This document shows positions 3,515-38,989 of a stretch of 64,000 nucleotides of DNA, piece after piece (positions within the stretch are counted from its first letter, which is position 1; each line of letters opens with the position of its first letter). Position numbers and translations under genes: made by a program. The stretch spans positions 2,771,151 through 2,835,150 of the forward strand of contig CAJINV010000007.1 of assembly GCA_905178155.1 (NCBI GenBank), written 5' to 3'. The notes below the pieces were generated by a model that saw only the letters and a list, made by a program, of their open reading frames with translations, was not told where the DNA came from and searched no databases. The DNA is from Amoebophrya sp. A120 (lineage: Eukaryota > Protista > Dinoflagellata).

Positions 3515-5637
3515 CTTGTTCTGTGTCCAAACACGAATTTCTGTCTTCTCGCCAGCAGGGCAGAGGGAAAGTAAATCGTGTAGATCCTTTTTCAAACGTG
3601 AAACTACAAGCAGTGAACCGAATGAAAGCAGGGGCATCGCGTGGTCTCGGTAACAGCACGATGCAATAACTAACCAAAATCACGCAAGATCAACGAAATG
3701 GCCATGTAACACAGATCTTGGAGAAATACGCGACAGTGATCCAGACAGGAGCCAAGAACGCGGGCGCGTTGCAGACTTATGCATGGCGCGCACGGGGTGC
3801 GCTCCAATGACAGTGGCAGCTGCAGCCGAAGGCTACCATGGTCCATAACGAACCGATGGCTTTCTGACATGTTATCAGAGATCATCGGAACTGTGTGTGC
3901 ATCGCGGATGTGCGAATGCCCAACAGGACCTTAATCGACGACGAAGGAACCGAGACGACGAAAGGCGACGAAAAGCTGCTGGTGTGCAGATTTCGAACGC
4001 GAAAAGGAGCTGCCACAATGCCGGACGACAAGGTCGCCGTGCGAATGTGTCATTCGCTTTTCAAAATAAAGTGTGAGTGTGGTGACCGGATGCTCACAGC
4101 CCCGACTTACGAACTACCATAGACAACTCCCACACTTGACGATCAACTATTTCCTTACGAAAACCTCAGATCTCATAATGTTGAGGTTGTCGGTGTAAAA
4201 AGCGTCGTGTTGTTCGTGTAGTTCGAAGAAAGATGATGGGGTTGAAGCACGACGATGTTTACTTTCGCATTTATTTCCAAAGTCGTGCTCAGTTTGTTCT
4301 ACGTCTTTTTCCTGTTTCTCCCGCCAAGGCCGCCGCCTCCGCTTCCTCCTCCAGGTCAGCCTCAACAATGATTCTGATCTACTTCGCTTTCTTCCACCAT
4401 CGCGCGGCTCGGCATCGTTTTTTGCACTGCTCTTCCGAATGATGTCGCTTCCATCGCCCTTGTGGGCGCCTCGCCTTTTTATCGGGCTGTAGTCTCCACA
4501 TAGTGATATAATTTCTCGTCGATCGAACCCCCTTGCGACACTCTGAGCGTCGTGTGATACTTGCCGCCGGTGTTGGCTGCAGTTCCGGCGGCTGCCGCGG
4601 CCATCACGATCATCTACAACGACTTCAGGACCAGGGTCACACATCCTCTCTGAAGCCGAACTTTCGCTTCTCCCGGGCACTAAAGGGTCGCATCTTTGGC
4701 GAGCCGCCATGCCGGACGAGCAAGAGGGAGATGACCTCTTGCTCGGGGAGTCGAGCTCCATGGTCGTCCTCGTGTTTTGGCTGCGGTTCTGCATGCAGCT
4801 ACATCTTTCACTCTCCCTTTTGGATGCAAGAGGCCATCAAGAGGATGGTCTCGCGTCTCTCGTCGTCGTCCCTCCTAGTGGTCCCAGCTCCTTCCCTAAT
4901 TGGATTATGATCGGTGTGCGTTTGAAGAAGTAGAAATGCCCCGCTCATTTCCAGCATAGCAAAAAGAACAACACAAAGAAAAAATAGAAGAAAGGTATCA
5001 TGTGTGAAAAAGAAAATCAAAATTGCCTTCTTGCTGTTCTTTGCAGTTTTTGGACATCAGCTTCTGTCTTCTTCTTTGGTGAAGAAGATGAAGTACATGT
5101 GTTCATCTAGAAGAAACTCTCTAACTCTACTCGCTCCTCACGTTGCGCATTTTCTTTTTTTTTTGTTCCCATTCGTCCAAGACCAGTTTTTTTTAGTTGT
5201 CATCGCTCCTTGCAACATTATCTGCGGAGATGAACAAGAGGACGTGAACAAGAGTCCCGCCCCAGCTGTAGTAACTACAGCAGGGTGAACTAGAACTCGT
5301 TGAGGCTAAGCTTTTACATTGCATGATTGTTGTCCGCACGCGCAACAATCAGCGAATATCTGCAGTACATTTTCGCGAACTTATGAAGGTGGAGGACGCC
5401 TCAGCTCTCTCTCTCTGGTCGCAGTCCTCATGCTTTTGCTCGCTTGTCTTGAATATCCAAGCAGCTCCAGCAATGCCACGATCGGCCTGTTAACAGCGAA
5501 ACCAATGTATTTCTAGCATCTACTCGCGGCTGTGGAAAGCTACAAAAACAACCGCAATCCACGATGACAGCTCAGAGTAGCATACCTAACAAACTATGAT
5601 TGTCATCTTTCGGCATGTGAATCTTCACCTCCCGCGA

Positions 5638-29523: not shown

Positions 29524-31742
29524 TGGAACGACTGCTTCAGCGCGGAATACGTTTATTTCTTGCCTGTAAAAATACTACTCAACTTGCTCATAGCAGGAGC
29601 AAGTCGTGCTGCAACCAAGCAGCAGCTATGTATTAGGAGCAGACCAAGAGCAGGACGAGCATGAGTAGAGTCGTGTGTTGACCTCCACTGCTCGTGCAGG
29701 CTGGCCGCACGAGCCAGACCATGAGCATGATACGCTGTCCTTCATAAAGCGGAGCAATCGCAACAGGAAAAATGCGGTGTTCAAAAAAAAAATCTGCGCT
29801 GTCTTCGTCGTAGTCAATACTAATTTAGGCATTGTCATGATTTGGATTGCTGTCATGTATCGGTATAAGTCGACTCAGCTGTTGGCTTTCTCAAGATAAA
29901 AAGATTTCTTCGTAAAAATCTCGACCGCAGGCGCAGACGAGTCGCAGTCGCATCTTCTCTAACGATAAGTAACTAAGAATCAACAACCTGAAAAACATCA
30001 CTCGAACGAACGGGTCGTACTCGTAGTCGTACCTTTCTATACAACTACATACTCTCCTCTCGTCGTCGAGCTCCGCATCAAAACCTCCTCCTCTACCTCT
30101 CTCTTCACAACTACGAAGACGACAATGCAGCATGTTGAACTGTACTGGCATGAGGTAGGTCAACAATCAGGAACCGGATCACACTGACCACTGCTAATGT
30201 TGAGAGAAGTACAACAATAAGCATAGCAAAGTAAACTAATCTAAAACATATTAAAATAAATATGGAAAGCACACCTAGATCGCTGGTTAAATCGTTTTTC
30301 AAGAGCGGAAGAAGGAGCATGGGGAACCTAAAGACGGCGAAGTTGAAGGGCGAGCAAGTGTTCGTTTGTAAGCATTCTTGTGGTCAGCTGGTAATTGTGA
30401 ACGTCTTCACTGGCGCCTTAAGCACCGGCCTAAACCTGTGCACCGTTTGCCTACGGTGCACAGATCGATCATGATCTGCGGCTCCAGCCTTTTATTACTT
30501 ACTCGTGCGGAAGATGAAGAATGGGCGCGGCTGCAACGCAGATAGCTTGCAGCTACCACTATCTCTCGGTAATTTCTCTCATGAAGAACCAGTACGACGA
30601 AAGGAAGAAGAACACGCTTACAAGATTATTTTCATCTAGCAGCGCGGCTGCCTATTTTGGATCAGCAAGCGCTAAAAGCATGCAAGGAAGAGATATAAAA
30701 ACTCAACTTATTGCAATTCATTTTATATGATGAGGGACGGTGCTTACGCCTTGACAATCACCGTGGATTTTTGCAATACAAATGTAGAAATTTCTGATGC
30801 CAAATAGCCACTTTTCCAACGTCATGCAAAAATAAAAGTTGGACCACGGGAGGAGGTGGACCGAGACTGACTTTGAAGACTGATGGCATAGCATGCAAAA
30901 ATACAAGTGCTTTGCACTCGAGCTTACATTCGTGTCTTATTTTCCTAAAGAATGAAAACTAACAAAAGACGATAAGTCTGAAGACTAAACTGCACATCGG
31001 TCAAGCACTTAGGTAAAGGCAGTGCACTTTTTTTACGCTATAATTATTGGGGGATGAGCACTCGACTGCTGCACGAGCTGCCCAAAGAACAAGGATCAAG
31101 GAGTTTCTGCGACGAAAGATTTTCGACAGTACAACTGTAATACTCAAGCTGCGACAGAGTCGTCTCTGATACCTCACGGAAGTCATGCTTGTTCTTAACA
31201 AAAAAGAGCTGTCCCCTTGGGGGATCGATATCAGTTGTGTGACAGCAAAGCGAGTCGACACACGATCGACTCACTTCGTGCACTGTAAAGGTGAATGCGT
31301 ATGGCCAAAAAATAATACGATTCAAATGCGAGCTATCGCTGTGCGCAAAATCAGAAAAGGCGCAGTCCCTTCCGCAGTCCCTGTCTCGACATCACAAAGC
31401 TCAGGCTTATCTGTCTGGAGAAGTAAAAGAAGAGAGCACATCCACATCATACATCTAAATTCACACATCATACTCCGTCCTGCAAACTCTTCAATACTCT
31501 CGTCTAAAGAGAGACGCCGACGTTGTACGTTTTTTCGCGTTTTGTGATCTGGTGGGTCGTTATCCGCTAGATGCGTAAAGTTGTAATCTCCCCAAGTAAG
31601 TTGTATCTCACTTTTCCAGTGCAGAGGCTAGTACTCGAGGTCCTCCTGTGCTGGAGCTGGTGCAAGTTGGCGGCACCAAATGTCGTTGATGTCGCGAAAG
31701 TCGGCGGACAAACAAACAACAAACCTTCACCAACAAACAAAC

Positions 31743-32116
31743 TGTAGGCATGATCAAGAAACACGATGCAAATCGATCTTGACAACCAACCCGATTCCGC
31801 AAGGCAAAATTGAAATCACGACGCAAATCAAGCTGCACTGATGATGATTCAAAATGAGGTCTAACCGAAATCACGATGTAAATTTGATGGTGATGATCAA
31901 CGATTGTTGATCTGATTTTAGCGTATACTATGGTGATTCGAGTCTGAATTTGAAGTACCCCAAAACTTGAATGTTTACCCGCAGGCTGTACGTTAGTACC
32001 ATTCAGATTGATTGCAACTTGAAACGCCTTCAAACAGGGCTTATCTACACCTTCACTCAAAGATGACCAGTGTTCAAATCGCCCGCGTTTCTTGCGTTGT
32101 TGATTGTCTTCCGACA
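31743..32116 (+). repeat. 5' LTR (374 bp)
   Basis: TGTAGGCATG...CTTCCGACA, repeated at 38521-38885. Confidence 0.96.
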
Positions 32117-32118
32117 TT

Positions 32119-32140
32119 CTAACGCACAGCCTTGAGCTGA
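32119..32140 (+). other. Atypical primer-binding site complementary to LTR 31985-31996 plus the 3' end of the dinoflagellate spliced leader
   Basis: CTAACGCACAGC-CTTGAGC-TGA begins 2 nt after the LTR. Its reverse complement contains GCTCAAG-GCTGTGCGTTAG, while the LTR reads CCCGCAG|GCTGTACGTTAG. There is no TGG start as expected for tRNA 3'-end priming. Confidence 0.7.
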
Positions 32141-32900
32141 CACCAAGTCCAAGACACGACCAGTGCCAACACGACAACAACTACCAAGACTGGTCCCCCC
32201 GCAACACTACAGCCACACCAAGAGCCGCAGAAAGGTACCCAGAGTGAGAGAACTTCTGGTAGTGTTTTGAGTAAATTTTTGGTTATTTTGAGTTCAAATT
32301 TTTAGCAAAATAACCCCCAGCCACCGAGTTCAAATCAGCCAACATTGGTGATTTGCTGCTGTGCTATCGTGCTTCGATACACGGTCAGAGGCTGGAGAAT
32401 TTGTAATAATACACCTATACAGGTGCAAGCGAGAGACAAAGCCACCAAAGGTGCATGCTACGAAGCGCATGACCTTTGCCGAAGCATCGAGCGAGGAAGA
32501 GGAAAGGCACTAAAAGTGTACCTGTTTCGGTCTGTTTTTCATCATTGGAAATTTTGAATGCGAACACGCACAAAGAGACACAAACTCGCATGCTAATCCC
32601 CGTCAATAACAACTATTACAGTTTGGACGGCGGATTTGCGTACCGAGCAGCAGCCTGGTACAAGAGCAAGAACCCAACAGCCGGGTACGAAGAGGCACTA
32701 AATTACGTCGGTTTTTGAAAATAGGAATGTGAGTGTAAGTCTGATTACGTCTGTAGTTGCATCGTGATTCAACAAGATGATCGCATTAGACATGCTGCGT
32801 ACCATCTGAATTCGATTGCAAATTTGCTGTACAGGTAGCCGCCCACGCGTGTACCGAGTACGACAGACGCTACAGCCGCGACGCGCGTGCTCATCGTAAA

Positions 32901-34056
32901 ATGATGGGGGCGCCGGATGACGAGAGTCGCCCGAACCTTTCCGGCACCGTCGGAATGGTTTACGACGCGGAACACGAAGGACAGGCAGGAAAGGACTTCT
33001 CTGCATTCAAGGGATACGCGATCGCTCAAGCGTTCGCCCTTGACATCGGAGCACAGTTCAAAGAGGACTTGGGAGGAAAGGTCGCTCTTGATAAGTGGGA
33101 TGAGGTTGATCAGTTAGCCCGTGACCAATGGGTTGCTGATGGCAAACACGAAAACGACTTCTGGCCCTCTTACACAACCGAAGTCCGCTCTGCTTATGGA
33201 AAGTTGTATGGTGCAGCATTCAAATCCTTAACCGGAAAAGCCCGAGCCAAAGCGCAAGAGGTTCAGGAAAAGCCCGGGGCTGCCGCGTGCGTAGTCACCT
33301 TGATCCACGCGATTAAGGAAAAGGCTAACCCACAGACCGCCGGTGCCCGTCGTATGTTGATTAAGGAATATTTCAACAATACGCAGGGAGAAGATGAAAC
33401 TGTGGACGAACATGTTGACAAACAGCTCAAGTCTCTGATGACGAAACTGGGCGGATCAATCACTATTGACGAATTGAGGCACCGCTGCACTTTCGGGAAC
33501 ATGCGTGAGGAATTCGATGATTGCAACAAGCGCGCCTTGGCGGATGGATCTAGTTTCGAAGAAACTAAGAATCACATGATCGAGGAAGAACGTGCTCACT
33601 CCAGCAACGGAGAGACCACGAAGCACAAGGCTAATCTGGTCCGCAACAAGAATTCTCGCAGCAAGCATGGTCCGCACCCGGATCACGTTCAGAAGAATCG
33701 CGAAAAGCAAATGTTGTCCAACATGTTTAAGAAGGAGATGCCGAATCTGATCCAGCAGGCCGCTGCGAATCTGATCGCGCAAAATCCAAACTTGGCCGTG
33801 AATCAGACTGCTGGTGGTAATGACGACAGTCATGCGGCCAATTATGCAGGAGATTCCAAGTGATGTTCGAATTGCAATTCGGAATCCCATAACTAACGCC
33901 AAGGACTGCTGGTACAAAAACAGCAACAAGGTCAATAAGCAATCTTCCAACAAGAACAACGGGAAGGGTAACAACACGAATACTGTTCGCAAGGGCAACG
34001 ACAAACCGAAGGGCGGAGGTAAGAAGGGAAAAGGAAAGAAGGGGAGGAAGCACTGA
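32901..34056 (+). pseudogene. gag: Copia gag with a disrupted CCHC zinc knuckle
   Basis: ORF 32901..33863 ends in TGA immediately before CSNCNSESH. Removing a TAAC tandem duplication (33890-33897) restores C-x2-C-x4-H-x4-C (CSNCNSESHNAKDC) and a Lys/Gly-rich tail ending at TGA 34054-34056. Confidence 0.8.
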
Positions 34057-37000
34057 TCTACAGATGGCGTCTCGAAGAAAAGTAGCTTGCTACACAAACT
34101 ACACAAAGCAAGAAAACTATTCTTACGGCTGGCGAAAACTCGATGTTATAATACGAATTATTCTCGATGCTTTTCAACTAAATTTTTACCGAAAATACCC
34201 CCCCAAAAGAACCCCCCACGAAAAGAGCCACAGCTTGGCGATGATGCACCAACGACTACGAGTCAGTTTGAAAAAGATGAATGCGCGTTCGACAACAGGG
34301 CTGACATCTTGAATCAAGATTCATCATCATTAATCGATATGGATGATTTATTATTGAATCTCGATAAGAATGAAAATGATATTTGTACCAATGATGCAGC
34401 TGGTCCAGCGGGACAGCTGAGAGGAAAACGAAAACGAACAGAGCTGGAGCTGGTTGAGCAGTTTGCAACTCCTGAGATGGCAAATTTGATACAACAAGTC
34501 CAGGCTCTTGAGTCGACCGATCGCGAAATCAGAAAGATTTTATATCCTCGATCTCATGCTTCGGATGCGTCCAAAACCGAACGAGTTGAAAAATGCAATC
34601 TGTCAATAGATGCAGTATTTTCGATCGCAACAAAAGAAAGCGAGCAAAATCATTCGCCCGAGTACACAGCAAGAAAGCTCGCACACCTCTACAGCGTTCG
34701 CGAATCAGTATTGAGGAAGGTGCGCGAGGCGAACGATGCGTATCGGAATGAAAAGGACGAGCAGCACCGAAATCATGAAACAGCTTTTAATTGTGTCGAT
34801 GATGCAATTTGCGACAGTGGCGCAACAAGTCACATGTCGGGCCGACCAGAGATTTTCGAATCTTGGGACGAAAGTAATCCAGTGCGAATAACTGTAGCAG
34901 ACGGAAAGGAGTTGGATGGCCCTGGATATTTTGGCACATTGAAACCAAACGCACTTGGTTGCAAACGTGCAACATTCCATCCATTCCTTCCACAGACTCT
35001 CCTCAGTGTCGAACAACTTAAGAAAGAAGGATACAGGGTTGCTTTCGACGAAGGGGGCAACTACTTGCAAAGTAGGAAAACAGGAAAGAGAACTTTTCTC
35101 CACAAAGGGATCGGAACCAAGCTGCCGGCCGTGGCACTTGGGTTCAACGAAGATCCTGGCGAGCAAGGTTTGTTGTGCGAAGAGATCGAGACCGAGGCTA
35201 CCATGATGACAAAGGCTGAGAAAATGCTTCTTGATCATCAGCGTGCTGGACATCGTAGTCTACCTGGAATAGTAGTCCGATGCCCTGCCTGCGATCTCGC
35301 GAAAAGCAAAGGCGCGCAACATGCAAAAGTAAAGAAAGAATGCTACAAAGTTGAGAAATTCACTGACCAAGTTGATTTTGACTTCACTGGACCTTGGGAA
35401 CCTGACTACTGGTCGCAAAGATGGGCTTTGAATGCCATCGATCAAGCAACCAGCTGGCCTCGTTCTTTCATCTGCAAAAGCAAAGCAGAAGCAGGCGCGA
35501 AACTGCAGGTCTGGATAAATGAAGAGGGACCACCGAAAAGAGTGAGATCCGACAACGCGAAAGAGTTCAAGGAGCCAAATAGCACTTGGAAAAAGACAGC
35601 ACAGACACAGTCCCCGCCGATTCATACTGACTCTTCAGCCCCATATGAGCCGCAAGAGAATGGGAAAGTTGAAAGATACAACCAAACTCACCAAAACGGA
35701 GTAAGAGCTATGATGGTCGGAGTTGATAAACGTATGTGGAGTTATGCAGCTCGCACTTTCTCACACATATTCGCCCGAACCCCGACAGCCAAAGGAGGCG
35801 AGTCGCCATATGAAAAACGCTTCAAAAGAAAACCTTCCATCAAGTACCTCCGACGGTTCGGAAGCTTGGTCTACGCGAAGGATCACTCACAGAAGTCGAA
35901 GCTTGAAGACCGGTTTACCCGTGGAATCTTTCTGGGCTACGCTCAAGAAAATTCTACATACCTGGTAGGCATGTGGTCTGCAGATGGTCGACGTAAGAAA
36001 AGCTCCAAAATCCGTTTCGGAGTTCACGAAGTGAAATGTTGTAAGTTTGATGAATCAGCGCTGGTCAGCAAAATAGATGATCTAAAGCCGGACGCTGACA
36101 AGCTGACGACTGATTTTCCGAATCCGGCGCGTCTGGGTGATAGTTCACAGCTCGAAGAGCCGAATGCGCCCGCTGCAGATCGCGATCAAAGCAGTCGTGG
36201 TCAGGACGCTCCGAGGACCGATCGTTCGAAAGATGAAGAAGATGCGGACAAGCGCAATTCCGATAATGCAAAGGATAACGTCCAAAATGACGAGGGCAAG
36301 AGTTTCGAAGGGGGTGAGCAACCTGAGGAAGGGGGTAAGGAAAAGCAAAACCCTAATCAGGTTTGGCTCGATATGTTTTCAGATGAGGCGCCTGAGAACT
36401 CCCCGGAACAGAAAGCAAAAGCTGAGAATGGAAATCGGAAAAGAAAGTCGAATACAGTTGATGCTGATGCTGCAGATAATGAGACACAAAAAGCGCCTAG
36501 GATCCTCGTTGAAGGACCTACACGAAAGAAACTTCGTAAGAAGGGCCGAGGCCAGGACAAAAAGAAGCGCAAAGAACGCAACGACAAAGGCAAGAGTCGT
36601 GGTCCTCGAGCTAAGAAAAGACAAAAAGCCAACCTTGTGTCGTCATCTGACTTACTGAAAGATTTACCAATGGAATTTGAAAAAGAAGCAGAGGCTATAT
36701 TCCAGATTCGTCATGAATTAGAGGAAGACGAAACTCCTTACCTCTTTGGCTTGCAGCACACTTGGGCCAAGCGTCTGGAAAGTCCTGACGCAATCAAATG
36801 GATCGAGTCAGATACAAAAGAACGCCTAGCGCTAGAAGAAACGAAAACGTGGAGGCATGCAACCGCAGAAGACATCAAAGAGATGGGCGATAAGTTAGAA
36901 ACTATCCCGACGGTTTGCATCTACACGAAGAAAAGAGACGGACGCTACAAGTGTCGTCTAGTAGCACTAGGAAACAGGCAAAGGCTATCTCTACAAGGAG

Positions 37001-38435
37001 AAATATACAGCCCAACTGTGAGCCATGCCGCAAACAGGTATTTACTTGCTGAAGCAGCAGCACACGGATGGAAAGTTAGACAGTTCGATACTTCCAATGC
37101 GTTTGTGCGTGCAGGTCTAGGTGACGAGATCGCGTTATGTCGCCTGCCCAAGCATAACGGCTGGAGCAAGAACAAAGAAAAAGGCGATGTTGTCAGGCTG
37201 TTAAAGTCGTTATACGGTCTGAAGATCAGCCCACGCCGCTGGTATGACGAATATGCTGGCAAACTCAAGAAGTTAGGCTGGGTTGTATCCGAACACGAAC
37301 CAGGTTTGTTCAAGAAATTTGCAAAAGACAAACAGGGAAAAGAGCAAGAACTCTGGCTAGCAGTTTACGTAGATGACAACATCACCACAGGTGAAGACGA
37401 TGACCTCGTCGCTGCAGAAATGAATGCAATTTTAGCAGAGTTCCCAGGAAAAGAAATTCTCGCAGAATATGACAAAGAAGGCAATGAGATCCACGACCTT
37501 CTAGGCGCAAAGTTGATCTTCAATGCGAAAAAGAGAGTCATGAAAATCACTTGCGAAGATGCAATTGATAAGCTGCTTGAGAAATTTCACATGAAGGACT
37601 GCCATGCAGTAGCTTCCCCATGTTTACCAAATTCCCATGCAGACTTGGACTCGCCGTCGAATTCCACACTTCCGATAAGATCGCTAGTTGGTGGAATGTT
37701 GTATCTCAGTTGCGTTGCCCGGCCTGATATCGCATTCGCAATACAGAAAGTAGCGACGCAGGTAGCTAGTCCAACCGACCAAACGGCAAAAGATGCCAAG
37801 CGTATTCTAGCGCATTTGAAAGGAACCAAATCGAACCAAATCGCAAGGATTAGAATACAACAAGCAACAAGAAAAGAAATTCAAAGAAATTTACACAAAA
37901 GCCGCAGAGCTAGAAAACAAGGAATCAATACAGAGACGCCATTGCGTTCTGCGATGCAGATTTCGCTGGATGTTCTGTAAGTTTCCGATCCACGTCCGGC
38001 GCAATCTTATATCGACGCGGAGTTCCTATTTGTTGGAAGTCGAAACATCAATCGACTCGAGCTACGTCAACAATGGAAGCCGAGTACTGCGCGATGTATG
38101 ACTGCGTAAGGATGACGATGGACCAAGGATATTTGAACTGGTTTCCAGAACAGGAGTCAGGATCTCTACCGTTGATCTTCAACGACAACAAGTCCGCGCT
38201 TGCGTTGAGTCAGACATCCGTAGCCACGAAAAGATCCAAGCACATGAGTCTTCGACTACATCTGGCACGAGACTACGGAAAAGACTTGTGTTATATTAAC
38301 ACGGATATCAATCTAGCGGATGGATTGACGAAACCACTTCCAGGAGAGAAATACATTCAAATCTTCAAAGCTCCGTCAAGAAAAGCTAATGAAGTATTTG
38401 CGAAAGCTCATTTTGTCGATTTCAGTAATCTCTAG
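34057..38435 (+). pseudogene. pol: Copia pol (protease, integrase, RT, RNase H), frameshifted before RNase H
   Basis: Protease AICDSGATSHM. Integrase HQRAGH...CPAC, DFTGP...RSDNAKEF...ENGKVER. RT YKCRLVALG, FDTSNAF, LKSLYGLK, VYVDD. RNase H FCDADFAG...MEAEY...NDNKSAL...NLADGLTK lies in another frame. A 10-bp tandem duplication GAACCAAATC sits at 37823-37842. Confidence 0.93.
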
Positions 38436-38509
38436 GATTTATTGATGCGAATTTCACAAGAATTCACCACATCAAAGATTTCTCGAGATGATTTCATGTT
38501 CATTGATTC

Positions 38510-38520
38510 GGAAGGGGGAA
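38510..38520 (+). other. Polypurine tract
   Basis: GGAAGGGGGAA abuts the 3' LTR. Confidence 0.9.
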
Positions 38521-38885
38521 TGTAGGCATGATCAAGAAACACGACGTAAATCGATCTTGACAACCAACCCGATTCCGCAATGCAAAATTGAAATCACGAT
38601 GTAAATCAAGATGAACTGATGATGATTCAAAATGAGGTCTAACCGAAATCACGATGTAAATTTGATGGCGATGATCAACGATTGTTGATCTGATTTTAGT
38701 GGCGGTTCGAGTCTGAATTTGAAGCACCCCAAAACTTGAATGTTTACCCGCAGGCTGTACGTTAGTACCATTCAGATTGATTGCAACTTGAAACGCCTTC
38801 AAACAGGGCCTATTTACACCTTCACTCAAAGATGACCAGTGTTCAAATCGCCCGCGTTTCTTGCGTTGTTGATTGTCTTCCGACA
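38521..38885 (+). repeat. 3' LTR (365 bp)
   Basis: Direct repeat of 31743-32116 with about a dozen substitutions and one ~9-bp indel (counted by eye). Confidence 0.96.
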
Positions 38886-38914
38886 CAAACAAACAAACAA
38901 ACAAACAAACAAAC
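38886..38914 (+). repeat. (CAAA)n microsatellite at the copia insertion site
   Basis: Seven CAAA units lie right of the element, and more lie at about 31707-31742 on the left. Confidence 0.9.
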
Positions 38915-38989
38915 AACACACGGGTGAATTTGATAAATATGTAGAATCGCACAGTCCCTTTCCCTGCTCAAGGCCCAGCCGTAACACAG

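What the first reader, a model, noticed from the sequence alone, without database searches (positions are those of the whole stretch)
31975..32140. Candidate spliced-leader-dependent, self-priming Ty1/copia retrotransposon
Seen in sequence: the PBS position (2 nt after the 5' LTR) reads CTAACGCACAGC CTTGAGC TGA rather than TGG. Its first 12 nt pair (11/12) with GCTGTACGTTAG inside the element's own LTR (31985-31996; identical at 38754-38765). That LTR segment directly follows a splice-acceptor-like TTTACCCGCAG. The next 7 nt, CTTGAGC, pair with the genomic LTR only at the AG. They are, however, the exact complement of GCTCAAG, the 3' end of the dinoflagellate spliced leader DCCGTAGCCATTTTGGCTCAAG (established), and three more nt pair if two G-U wobbles are allowed. 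Established: S. pombe Tf1 (Ty3/gypsy group) primes by folding its own 5' end onto the PBS and cleaving it, whereas copia elements normally use host tRNA. Inference: the transcript is SL trans-spliced at 31984/31985, the SL-R junction anneals to the PBS (~22-bp duplex, one mismatch), and cleavage after the 12th R nucleotide supplies the primer. This would couple retrotransposition to host trans-splicing. I know of no description of this mechanism. The SL-specific part is only 5 extra exact nt, so its weight comes from its exact position.
Basis: partly seen in the sequence, partly recalled or inferred. Interest (0 to 1): 0.95.

Follow-up and report, generated by a model that had tools for sequence, protein, structure and literature searches.

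The report
Spliced-leader-primed copia retrotransposon
This dinoflagellate "jumping gene" has no tRNA primer site; the site matches the junction its own RNA would gain when the host adds its universal spliced leader, so it probably primes its own copying with that trans-spliced 5' end, a link not found in the literature searched.

Summary

**The element.** It is a complete Ty1/copia element at 31743-38885, in a 115.5-Mb genome that carries the dinoflagellate spliced leader (SL).

**The primer site.** The PBS at 32119-32130 pairs 11/12 with LTR bases 31985-31996, which follow TTTACCCGCAG. The next 7 nt are the exact complement of the SL 3' end.

**Comparison within the genome.**
- I located the 5' LTR and PBS in six copia lineages of this genome (RT identity 37-100%).
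- In five of them the PBS has changed and still pairs with that lineage's own LTR segment directly after a pyrimidine-tract CAG. The fit is weak in lineage 7. Lineage 4 has no such segment.
- An SL-complementary stretch follows in all six (combined p about 1e-7). In lineage 6 it is degenerate in the full-length copy.

**Truncated copies.** Two copies in this genome and one metagenome contig from another organism carry a PBS complementary to R, perfect in two and 12/13 in the third, followed by 12-14 exact nt of SL complement.

**Host primers.** Nothing outside these elements matches the PBS complement at two or fewer mismatches, and 19 sampled tRNA genes match worse.

**Limits.** Three RNA runs laid no reads, so trans-splicing at 31984/31985 and the cleavage are inferred. 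Self-priming has been predicted for plant copia elements. The SL link was not found in any paper searched. The scan also noted self-priming on other DNA of this genome (s1-857832).

The parts
31738..31742 (+). 5' copy of the candidate target-site duplication, CAAAC, inside a (CAAA)n tract
   Evidence: The same 5 nt recur at 38886-38890. The repeat context makes this weak evidence.
31743..32116 (+). 5' LTR (TG...CA, 374 nt)
   Evidence: Direct repeat with 38521-38885, 96-97% identical.
31974..31984 (+). Pyrimidine tract plus CAG (TTTACCCGCAG); inferred SL trans-splice acceptor and the U3/R boundary
   Evidence: The sequence is. Every lineage with an R complement has a Y-tract-CAG at the same place. 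Alignable homology between LTR families A and B begins about 15 nt upstream of this CAG, and U3 is unalignable.
31985..31996 (+). First 12 nt of the inferred R (GCTGTACGTTAG); the self-primer segment, followed by the conserved TAC
   Evidence: It pairs 11/12 with the PBS. An LTR of the same family on contig C10 reads GCTGTGCGTTAG, which gives 12/12. It pairs with the PBS in the MFE and centroid folds.
32117..32118 (+). TT spacer between the LTR end and the PBS
   Evidence: The spacer is WT in lineages 1-4 and 6 and in the metagenome contig. Lineage 7 has none.
32119..32130 (+). PBS part 1: complement of the R start (CTAACGCACAGC)
   Evidence: It covaries with the LTR segment across lineages.
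32131..32140 (+). PBS part 2: complement of the SL 3' end (CTTGAGC exact, then TGA pairing with two G-U wobbles and one A-U)
   Evidence: An SL complement recurs at this position in all six lineages.
32901..33863 (+). Candidate gag ORF (320 aa); no Pfam match
34087..37980 (+). pol ORF (1297 aa): Pol_BBD, the integrase SH3-like domain, then RVT_2, which is the Ty1/copia order
38510..38520 (+). Polypurine tract GGAAGGGGGAA, abutting the 3' LTR
38521..38885 (+). 3' LTR; contains the same acceptor and R start (R start at 38754-38765)
38886..38890 (+). 3' copy of the candidate target-site duplication, CAAAC

Best explanation
**What it is.** The element is a Ty1/copia LTR retrotransposon whose minus-strand primer is its own trans-spliced 5' end.

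**Proposed steps.**
1. (Inferred) The element RNA is transcribed from upstream of 31985.
2. (Inferred) It receives the 22-nt dinoflagellate spliced leader at the CAG at 31982-31984, so the mature RNA begins ...UUUUGGCUCAAG|GCUGUACGUUAG.
3. (Complementarity shown; folding predicted) This SL-R junction folds back over U5 onto the site 2 nt past the LTR (32119-32140).
   - It forms 12 R base pairs with one mismatch.
   - It forms 7 exact SL base pairs, and 3 more if two G-U wobbles are allowed.
4. (Inferred, by analogy with Tf1) The RNA is cut after the AG at 31996, before the conserved UAC. The freed 3' OH primes minus-strand strong-stop DNA.
5. (Inferred) The cut also removes the SL from the template.
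6. (Inferred from the truncated copies) During plus-strand strong-stop synthesis the primer is copied back for the R part and about 12-14 nt of the SL.

**Breadth.** The same design runs through at least six copia lineages of this genome and one element in another organism. In lineage 4 the site pairs with the SL alone.
For: **1. Covariation between PBS and LTR.** Each PBS pairs with its own LTR segment directly after a Y-tract-CAG.

| Lineage or copy | R start in the LTR | PBS | Pairs |
|---|---|---|---|
| 1A (window) | GCTGTACGTTAG | CTAACGCACAGC | 11/12; 12/12 with the C10 LTR variant |
| 1B | GCTGTGACGATAG | CTAACGGCACAGC | 11/13 |
| 1C | GCTGTGACGCTAG | CTAACGGCACAGC | 11/13 |
| 1D | GCTTTGACGCTAG | CTAGCGCCAAAGC | 12/13 |
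| 2 | GTTGCGACTAG | CTAGTCGCACC | 10/11 |
| 3 | GCTGTCAAG | CTTGACATC | 8/9 |
| 6 (full length) | ATGTGAATCAG | CTGATTCACAC | 10/11 |
| 6 (truncated) | ATGTGAATCAG | CTGATTCACAT | 11/11 |
| 7 | GATGTAACGCAG | CTACGCTACGCC | 8 WC + 1 GU of 12 |
| metagenome L179 | GTTATGGTAG | CTACCATAAC | 10/10 |

**2. SL complement next to the R complement.**
- The six lineages were sampled through their RT, not through SL content.
- The stretches are CTTGAGC (lineage 1), CTT-TATTC-AGCCAAAAT (2), CTT-TA-AGCCAAAA (3), CTTGAGCC directly after the spacer (4), CTTG-GT-GCC (6) and CTTGAG (7).
- Measured against 30-nt windows of the rest of this window, Fisher's combined p is 9e-8.
- The genome-wide pattern ACAWTCT-N-CTT-N-AGCCAAAA gives 11 hits against 0 for the control.
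- The unspliced bases upstream of R match only 1-5 of the same positions.

**3. Truncated copies.** Each ends inside the SL complement.
- L051 ends after CTTGAGCCAAAAT (13/13) and runs into host DNA.
- L041 ends after CTTGAGCCAAAA (12/12) and joins a partial LTR at a CCAAAA microhomology. The whole is flanked by CTTAT/TTTAT.
- L179 has CTTGAGCCAAAATG (14/14) and comes from another organism. Its LTR has no match in this genome.

**4. Folds.** MFE folds close the R start onto the PBS (z = -2.2 and -4.1).

**5. Host primers.**
- No locus outside the elements matches the 20-nt PBS complement at two or fewer mismatches.
- The three-mismatch hits do not fall in any tRNA gene listed.
- 19 sampled tRNA genes match worse.

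**6. The host has the SL.** There are 63 matches against 0 for the control, and the flanks diverge right after ...CAAG.
Against: - No RNA evidence exists. Three raw RNA runs with the same species label laid 0 reads on 31600-33100, and the fourth run behaves like DNA. Trans-splicing at this AG, the RNA 5' end and the cleavage site are therefore unobserved.
- In the window copy the SL-specific part is only 5 bases beyond the shared AG.
- Most copies carry one or two mismatches in the R/PBS duplex. The A/C or A/G mismatch at position 7 recurs in families 1B, 1C and 1D.
- Lineages 2 and 3 interrupt the SL complement with a 2-5-nt loop. The full-length lineage 6 copy and the lineage 7 copy have degenerate versions.
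- Lineage 4 has no R complement at all.
- The lineages are relatives with conserved LTR ends, so their SL complements may share descent and are not fully independent.
- The three copies with a long perfect SL complement were found with patterns that required part of it.
- Only six lineages could be read. Three further pieces I fetched for two other lineages and for lineage 7 missed the LTR; lineage 7 was then read from an adjoining piece.
Confidence: 0.72

Rival explanations
1. SL-bearing self-primer, but the SL complement is only a scar. The trans-spliced 5' end primes through the R/PBS pairs alone. The SL-complementary bases downstream of the PBS are left by plus-strand strong-stop DNA copying into the SL part of the primer and have no role in annealing.
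For: - Perfect SL complements of 12-14 nt occur only in truncated, cDNA-like copies.
- Full-length copies carry shorter or interrupted versions.
Against: - The interrupted forms CTT-TA-AGCCAAAA and CTT-TATTC-AGCCAAAAT are kept in lineages whose RT is about 50% diverged from this element and whose R complements differ completely. This suggests selection on the pairing rather than decay of a scar.
- Lineage 4 has only the SL complement at the PBS position.
Confidence: 0.12
2. Plain Tf1-like self-priming without the SL. Transcription starts at 31985, the first 12 nt pair with the PBS, and the SL-like complement and the CAG are coincidental or serve another purpose.
For: - The R/PBS covariation and the folds fit this reading equally well.
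- Self-priming without SL is known for Tf1 and predicted for plant TAR copia elements.
Against: - An SL complement lies at the junction position in six lineages, p about 1e-7.
- Exact runs of 12-14 nt occur in three truncated copies.
- A Y-tract-CAG lies directly before R in every lineage that has an R complement.
- Lineage 4 has only the SL complement.
Confidence: 0.08
3. A host RNA (a tRNA, a tRNA half or another small RNA) is the primer, as in other copia elements.
For: - Most copia elements use tRNA-iMet or its half (PMC6317226).
- Only 19 tRNA genes of five anticodon types, none of them initiator Met, could be compared.
Against: - The PBS lacks TGG.
- Its R part differs between lineages and tracks each lineage's own LTR.
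- The genome-wide search for the 20-nt complement finds only element copies at two or fewer mismatches.
- The sampled tRNA genes match at most 8/12 to 10/13.
Confidence: 0.03
4. Chance resemblance in a single copy.
For: In the window alone, the SL-specific evidence is 5 bases.
Against: The design is replicated in six lineages and in another organism, while the control counts are 0.
Confidence: 0.01

Closest known systems
Tf1/Tf2 of Schizosaccharomyces pombe and the Tf1/sushi group (self-primed reverse transcription)
   Same: - The PBS is complementary to the first 11 or so nt of the element's own RNA rather than to a tRNA.
- The 5' end folds back over U5 onto the PBS.
- Cleavage at the end of the duplex is inferred to free the primer.
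   Different: - Those elements are Ty3/gypsy; this one is Ty1/copia (RVT_2, with integrase before RT).
- In Tf1 the primer starts at the transcription start. Here the pairing runs on into a host-added spliced leader, so the primer would be a chimera of host SL and element R.
- In lineage 4 the pairing is with the SL alone.
Plant Ty1/copia TAR lineage (Houba, Osr-1), predicted self-priming (PMC6317226)
   Same: A copia element whose PBS is complementary to its own LTR rather than to a tRNA.
   Different: Plants have no spliced leader, so there is no host-derived extension of the primer. The relation to these dinoflagellate lineages was not tested here.
Retroviral and Ty tRNA priming, in which plus-strand strong-stop DNA copies 18 nt of the tRNA
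   Same: The primer is copied back into DNA for a fixed length. Here the truncated copies record the R part plus 12-14 nt of SL.
   Different: The primer is the element's own processed RNA, not a tRNA. What stops the copying inside the SL is unknown.
DinoSL relics at the 5' end of dinoflagellate retrogenes (Slamovits and Keeling 2008, as cited in PMC7789003)
   Same: SL sequence ends up in genomic DNA through reverse transcription of trans-spliced RNA. This genome has many such sense-oriented relics.
   Different: - Here the SL sequence is antisense and partial.
- It sits at the PBS of an LTR element, fused to the complement of the element's own R start.

Membership tests
Ty1/copia LTR retrotransposon (Pseudoviridae-like) | RVT_2-type reverse transcriptase, with integrase upstream of RT | tested here: met
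   PF07727 RVT_2 matches residues 937-1180 (E = 5e-29). The integrase SH3-like domain lies at 579-627 and Pol_BBD at 241-316.
Ty1/copia LTR retrotransposon (Pseudoviridae-like) | Two LTRs with TG...CA ends, a polypurine tract and a 5-bp target duplication | tested here: met
   The target duplication CAAAC lies in a (CAAA)n tract, so that one feature is weak. The related solo LTR in L042 has a clean AAGTT/AAGTT duplication.
Self-priming LTR retrotransposon (Tf1-like mechanism) | PBS complementary to an LTR-internal segment that is the 5' end of R | tested here: met
   Pairing is 11/12 in the window. It covaries in five of the six lineages read here (lineage 4 has no R complement) and in a metagenome contig. 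That the segment is the RNA 5' end is inferred.
Self-priming LTR retrotransposon (Tf1-like mechanism) | No tRNA-complementary PBS | tested here: met
   There is no TGG. No locus outside the elements matches the PBS complement at two or fewer mismatches. 19 tRNA genes match worse. The tRNA sample is incomplete.
Self-priming LTR retrotransposon (Tf1-like mechanism) | Fold-back structure bringing the 5' end onto the PBS | tested here: met
   MFE and centroid folds. These are predictions only.
Self-priming LTR retrotransposon (Tf1-like mechanism) | RNase H cleavage of the RNA after the paired segment | not testable with these tools
   The only sequence hint is a conserved AG|UAC context at the predicted cut.
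Tf1/sushi clade (Ty3/gypsy) | Gypsy-type RT with the order RT then integrase | tested here: not met
   The RT is RVT_2 and the domain order is copia-type. The element works like Tf1 but is not a member of that clade.
DinoSL trans-spliced RNA | The host possesses the DinoSL | tested here: met
   63 matches against 0 for the control, 51 of them exact.
DinoSL trans-spliced RNA | Acceptor AG preceded by a pyrimidine tract at the junction | tested here: met
   TTTACCCGCAG in the window, with equivalents in every lineage that has an R complement.
DinoSL trans-spliced RNA | RNA reads that join the SL to 31985 | tested here: inconclusive
   Three RNA runs laid 0 reads, and the fourth run looks like DNA.

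The most novel reading that the evidence does not exclude
- In Syndiniales-like dinoflagellates, a whole radiation of copia retrotransposons has made host spliced-leader trans-splicing an obligatory step of replication.
- The SL-R junction, created only by trans-splicing, is the minus-strand primer.
- In one lineage the SL exon alone is the primer.
- Truncated cDNA insertions record the primer as R plus 12-14 nt of SL.
- Such elements would need no promoter of their own in a polycistronically transcribed genome. Only processed RNA would be competent for replication.
Probability: 0.6. Interest if true: 0.9.

Novelty: new variant of a known kind. Interest (0 to 1): 0.85.

Why it matters
**Why it would matter.**
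- The choice of primer is a defining step of LTR-retroelement replication. Known solutions are host tRNAs, tRNA halves and the element's own unprocessed 5' end.
- A primer formed only after the host adds its spliced leader would be a further solution. It ties retrotransposition to a host RNA-processing reaction.
- It would explain how LTR elements can live in genomes where mRNA 5' ends are made by trans-splicing, because the cut would strip the SL from the template.
- It may also inform how SL-tagged retrocopies arise in dinoflagellates.

**How it can be tested.** Junction reads, 5' RACE and mapping of strong-stop cDNA ends would each test it directly.

Tried and rejected
**RNA evidence.**
- The look-up of sequencing runs found no holder on record as RNA.
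- The single read-laying run gave 0 reads in three raw RNA runs with the same species label. The fourth run gave only DNA-like contigs that cross the LTR boundary. This is no test of trans-splicing.

**Cross-species loci.**
- The search for homologous proteins gave two moderately close relatives, P0001 and P0002.
- The search for related loci on viral contigs found no relative.

**Pattern scans elsewhere.**
- The viral-contig pattern scan gave 118 hits, all by chance. None had an R complement of 9 nt or more. This served as a negative control.
- Of seven metagenome hits, six were chance matches inside bacterial-type ORFs or low-complexity DNA. One, L179, was real.

**Own-genome hits.**
- L052, L053 and L055 have no LTR features and were rejected.
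- L054 is a 3' LTR plus flank and was rejected.

**Limits on reading the genome.**
- Three guessed pieces, L182-L184, missed the LTR/PBS of their lineages. An adjoining piece, L193, then gave lineage 7.
- No LTR-internal complement was found for the bases after the lineage 4 LTR.

- The joined SL-R sequence has no reference. I did not fold it or send it to any search tool. Pairs were counted exon by exon.
- I built no consensus of the copies.

Full report
**1. Observation**

The stretch lies in a complete LTR retrotransposon.
- The LTRs are 31743-32116 and 38521-38885. They have TG..CA ends, are 96-97% identical and differ by one 9-bp indel.
- A polypurine tract, GGAAGGGGGAA, abuts the 3' LTR.
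- CAAAC flanks both ends, though inside a (CAAA)n tract.
- The 1297-aa ORF at 34087-37980 carries Pol_BBD, the integrase SH3-like domain and then RVT_2. That is the Ty1/copia order.

- TT follows the LTR.
- CTAACGCACAGC (32119-32130) comes next. It is the reverse complement of GCTGTACGTTAG (31985-31996, and 38754-38765) at 11 of 12 positions.
- That LTR segment directly follows TTTACCCGCAG.
- The next 7 nt, CTTGAGC, are the exact complement of GCTCAAG.
- TGA then pairs with SL bases G15, U14 and U13 through two wobbles and one A-U pair.
- The unspliced genomic bases upstream of 31985 would match only 3 of those 7 positions.

**2. Host**

- The window's genome (G000) has 115.5 Mb in 401 contigs.
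- It holds 63 matches to the 21-nt DinoSL at one mismatch or fewer, 51 of them exact, against 0 for the reversed control.
- The sequences after ...CAAG differ from locus to locus, as expected for SL relics on retrocopies.
- Size, SL and other readers' notes of introners fit an Amoebophrya-like syndinian. I could not name the organism.

**3. Sister families (lineage 1)**

A DNA search of the genome found two more A-type loci and a 75%-identical group, here called families B, C and D.
- Homology between the LTRs of A and B starts about 15 nt before the CAG. U3 is unalignable, while R-U5 is conserved.
- The post-CAG segment and the PBS change together.

| Family | LTR segment after CAG | PBS complement |
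|---|---|---|
| A | GCTGT(A/G)CGTTAG | GCTGTGCGTTAG |
| B | GCTGTGACGATAG | GCTGTGCCGTTAG |
| C | GCTGTGACGCTAG | GCTGTGCCGTTAG |
| D | GCTTTGACGCTAG | GCTTTGGCGCTAG |

- The G variant of A, in an LTR on contig C10, gives 12/12.
- D differs from B and C at two positions on both sides.
- A lacks one base on both sides.

**4. Independent lineages**

An RT search showed at least seven copia lineages, at 27-100% identity to this RT. I located the LTR end and PBS in five more lineages.

| Lineage | RT identity to this element | LTR segment | After the LTR end |
|---|---|---|---|
| 2 | 52% | ..CCCCTGCAG\|GTTGCGACTAG | CTAACA AT CTAGTCGCACC TTTATTC AGCCAAAAT |
| 3 | 48% | ..CTGTTTCAG\|GCTGTCAAG | CTAACA TT CTTGACATC CTT TA AGCCAAAA |
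| 4 | 47% | no complement found | CTAACA AT CTTGAGCC |
| 6 | 37% | ..TGTATACAG\|ATGTGAATCAG | CTAACA TT CTGATTCACAC TTGGTGCC |
| 7 | 38% | ..CCTACAG\|GATGTAACGCAG | CTAACA CTACGCTACGC CTTGAG |

- In lineage 7 the pairing is 8 Watson-Crick plus 1 G-U of 12. That site is the best in its LTR, but the fit is weak.
- The primer segment always ends in AG and is usually followed by TAC. The PBS always starts with CT.
- So the R complement has been replaced entirely between lineages and still fits each lineage's own LTR.
- A shared host primer cannot explain that. Self-priming can.

**5. The SL part**

- I compared the 30 nt after the LTR end with the first 15 nt of the SL complement, the SL being taken by reference from L031:1501-1521.
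- The longest shared word was 7, 9, 8, 8, 4 and 6 nt in lineages 1, 2, 3, 4, 6 and 7.
- In 110,882 background 30-nt windows of this window, words of 7, 8 and 9 nt or more occur at 0.011, 0.0025 and 0.0002.
- Fisher's combined p is 9e-8.
- Genome-wide, ACAWTCT-N(6-12)-CTT-N(1-6)-AGCCAAAA occurs 11 times, all in these elements. The reversed control gives 0.
- Because the lineages are relatives, part of this is conservation by descent. It has persisted while the adjoining R complement turned over, which argues for constraint.

**6. Truncated copies that record the primer**

The pattern scans and one metagenome scan turned up three copies with long exact SL complements. The sense-strand SL-R junction itself was not found in the DNA: all close matches to the lineage 1B junction lie antisense to their element, at the PBS.

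*L051 (contig C13)*
- It carries an LTR 99% identical to the full-length lineage 6 copy.
- Then come TT, CTGATTCACAT (11/11) and CTTGAGCCAAAAT (13/13).
- Unrelated DNA with an ORF that looks by eye like an N-acetyltransferase gene follows (not searched).

*L041 (contig C8)*
- Its order is LTR, TT, CTAGCGCCAAAGC, CTTGAGCCAAAA (12/12) and then a partial LTR.
- The partial LTR is joined at a CCAAAA microhomology.
- The whole is flanked by CTTAT/TTTAT.

*L179 (metagenome contig Ga0099798_11172)*
- It reads ..TCTTCGCAG|GTTATGGTAG ... CTAACA AT CTACCATAAC (10/10) CTTGAGCCAAAATG (14/14).
- A 27-nt duplication flanks the insert.
- Its LTR has no match in G000, so it comes from another organism.

*Reading*
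- These look like captured reverse-transcription intermediates: LTR, spacer and a copy of the primer.
- If so, the primer carried the R start fused to the SL 3' end, copied for 12-14 nt. This reading is an inference.
- The three were ascertained with patterns that required part of the SL complement. Their R/PBS matches after a CAG (11/11, 12/13 and 10/10) were not required by those patterns.

**7. Controls and rivals**

*Pattern controls*
- 118 chance hits of a similar pattern in viral contigs had no R complement of 9 nt or more.
- The other six metagenome hits lie in bacterial-type ORFs or low-complexity DNA.

*Host-RNA primer*
- The 20-nt PBS complement occurs at two or fewer mismatches only in element copies. 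Three-mismatch hits number 6, against 9 for the reversed control.
- None of them falls in a tRNA gene listed.
- 19 tRNA genes (Gly, Lys, Arg, Gln) match at most 8/12 to 10/13.
- The tRNA set is incomplete, but the covariation makes a host tRNA primer very unlikely.

*Fold*
- The fold of 31985-32140 closes nt 1-12 on the PBS in both the MFE and the centroid structure (z = -2.2).
- L051 does the same (z = -4.1).

**8. What was not obtained**

- No listed holder of the stretch is on record as RNA.
- Three raw RNA runs with the same species label laid no read on 31600-33100. The fourth run gave DNA-like contigs that cross the LTR boundary.
- Trans-splicing at 31984/31985, the RNA 5' end and the cleavage after 31996 are therefore inferred.
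- The joined SL-R sequence has no reference. I did not fold it or send it to any search tool, and I counted pairs exon by exon.
- I built no consensus of the copies.

**9. Mechanism proposed**

*Shown*
- The PBS is complementary to the R start.
- It continues into the complement of the SL 3' end.
- A Y-tract-CAG precedes R in every lineage that has an R complement.
- The pairing covaries.
- Truncated copies end in the SL complement.

*Inferred*
- The RNA is trans-spliced at the CAG.
- The SL-R junction folds onto the PBS.
- The RNA is cut after the AG, as in Tf1, and the 3' OH primes minus-strand synthesis.
- The cut removes the SL from the template.
- Plus-strand strong-stop synthesis copies the primer about 12-14 nt into the SL.
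- In lineage 4 the cut would fall at the SL's own AG (AG|UA), which would make the SL itself the primer.

**10. Comparison with what is known**

- It works like Tf1/sushi self-priming but is not of that clade, because its RT and domain order are copia-type.
- Self-priming has been predicted for plant copia elements of the TAR lineage (PMC6317226). That part is therefore a new member of a known kind.
- Four full-text searches gave no paper that links a spliced leader to LTR-element priming.
- Dinoflagellate papers discuss sense-strand SL relics on retrogenes only (PMC7789003).
- The library misses most subscription journals, so an earlier description cannot be excluded.

**11. Verdict**

- Self-priming from the post-CAG segment: about 0.9.
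- Participation of the SL in the primer: about 0.8.
- The full model as stated: about 0.7.

It is a new variant of a known kind and of high interest. An RNA test is the obvious next step.

Noticed in passing
L049 (G000:C4:1715200-1716900), 1528-1560; five further copies listed: In copia lineage 4 the SL complement CTTGAGCC follows the LTR end and the AT spacer directly. There is no R complement, and no LTR-internal complement to the following bases. The primer may be the SL exon alone. The next bases, CTGTGCTTAG, resemble the lineage 1 R start in sense orientation; this is unexplained.
   Followed up: partly
L041 (G000:C8:4047000-4056900), about 4822-5524: A composite mini-element: full LTR, TT, PBS, 12 nt of SL complement, then a partial LTR joined at a CCAAAA microhomology. 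It is flanked by CTTAT/TTTAT. It looks like an aberrant strand-transfer product that was then integrated.
   Followed up: partly
L051 plus L056 (G000:C13:914850-916900): LTR, PBS and 13 nt of SL complement end abruptly in host DNA. That DNA holds an ORF (853-1776 of the joined pieces) that looks by eye like an N-acetyltransferase gene; no family search was run on it. GAGCCA and ATAT occur on both sides of the insert, which may mean microhomology-mediated capture.
   Followed up: partly
L179 (metagenome contig Ga0099798_11172), 5535-5890: The same LTR, PBS and SL-complement design in another organism. It lies beside a 1194-aa TPR_12-repeat ORF. The insert plus 60 nt of filler is flanked by a 27-nt duplication. 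The host is unidentified.
   Followed up: partly
L032, L035 and L037; also L033 and L034 (loci): Repeat families that begin with a complete sense-strand DinoSL, followed by the same sequence at several loci. They are probably SL-headed retrocopies or retroelements. Other first readers noted similar items in this genome.
   Followed up: no
L182 plus L193 (G000:C5:7343400-7346400), 2086-2112 of the joined pieces: In lineage 7 the bases after the PBS read CTTGAG-A-CTCAAG. That is the SL complement followed at once by an SL-like sense hexamer, forming a near-perfect palindrome.
   Followed up: no
L185 (G000:C9:573540-576180): A tandem array of eight tRNA-Gly(GCC) genes followed by four tRNA-Lys genes, spaced about 200 bp apart.
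   Followed up: no
window 31700-31742 and 38886-38925: The element sits inside a (CAAA)n/(CAAAC)n microsatellite, so the 5-bp target duplication cannot be told from the repeat.
   Followed up: no
L045 (G000:C2:9481000-9490900), 2025-2043: The closest sister copy has a decayed PBS, CTACGGCACAGCCTTGCGC. It pairs 9/12 with R and keeps only 4 nt of the SL run. RT matches at this locus come in separate pieces.
   Followed up: no
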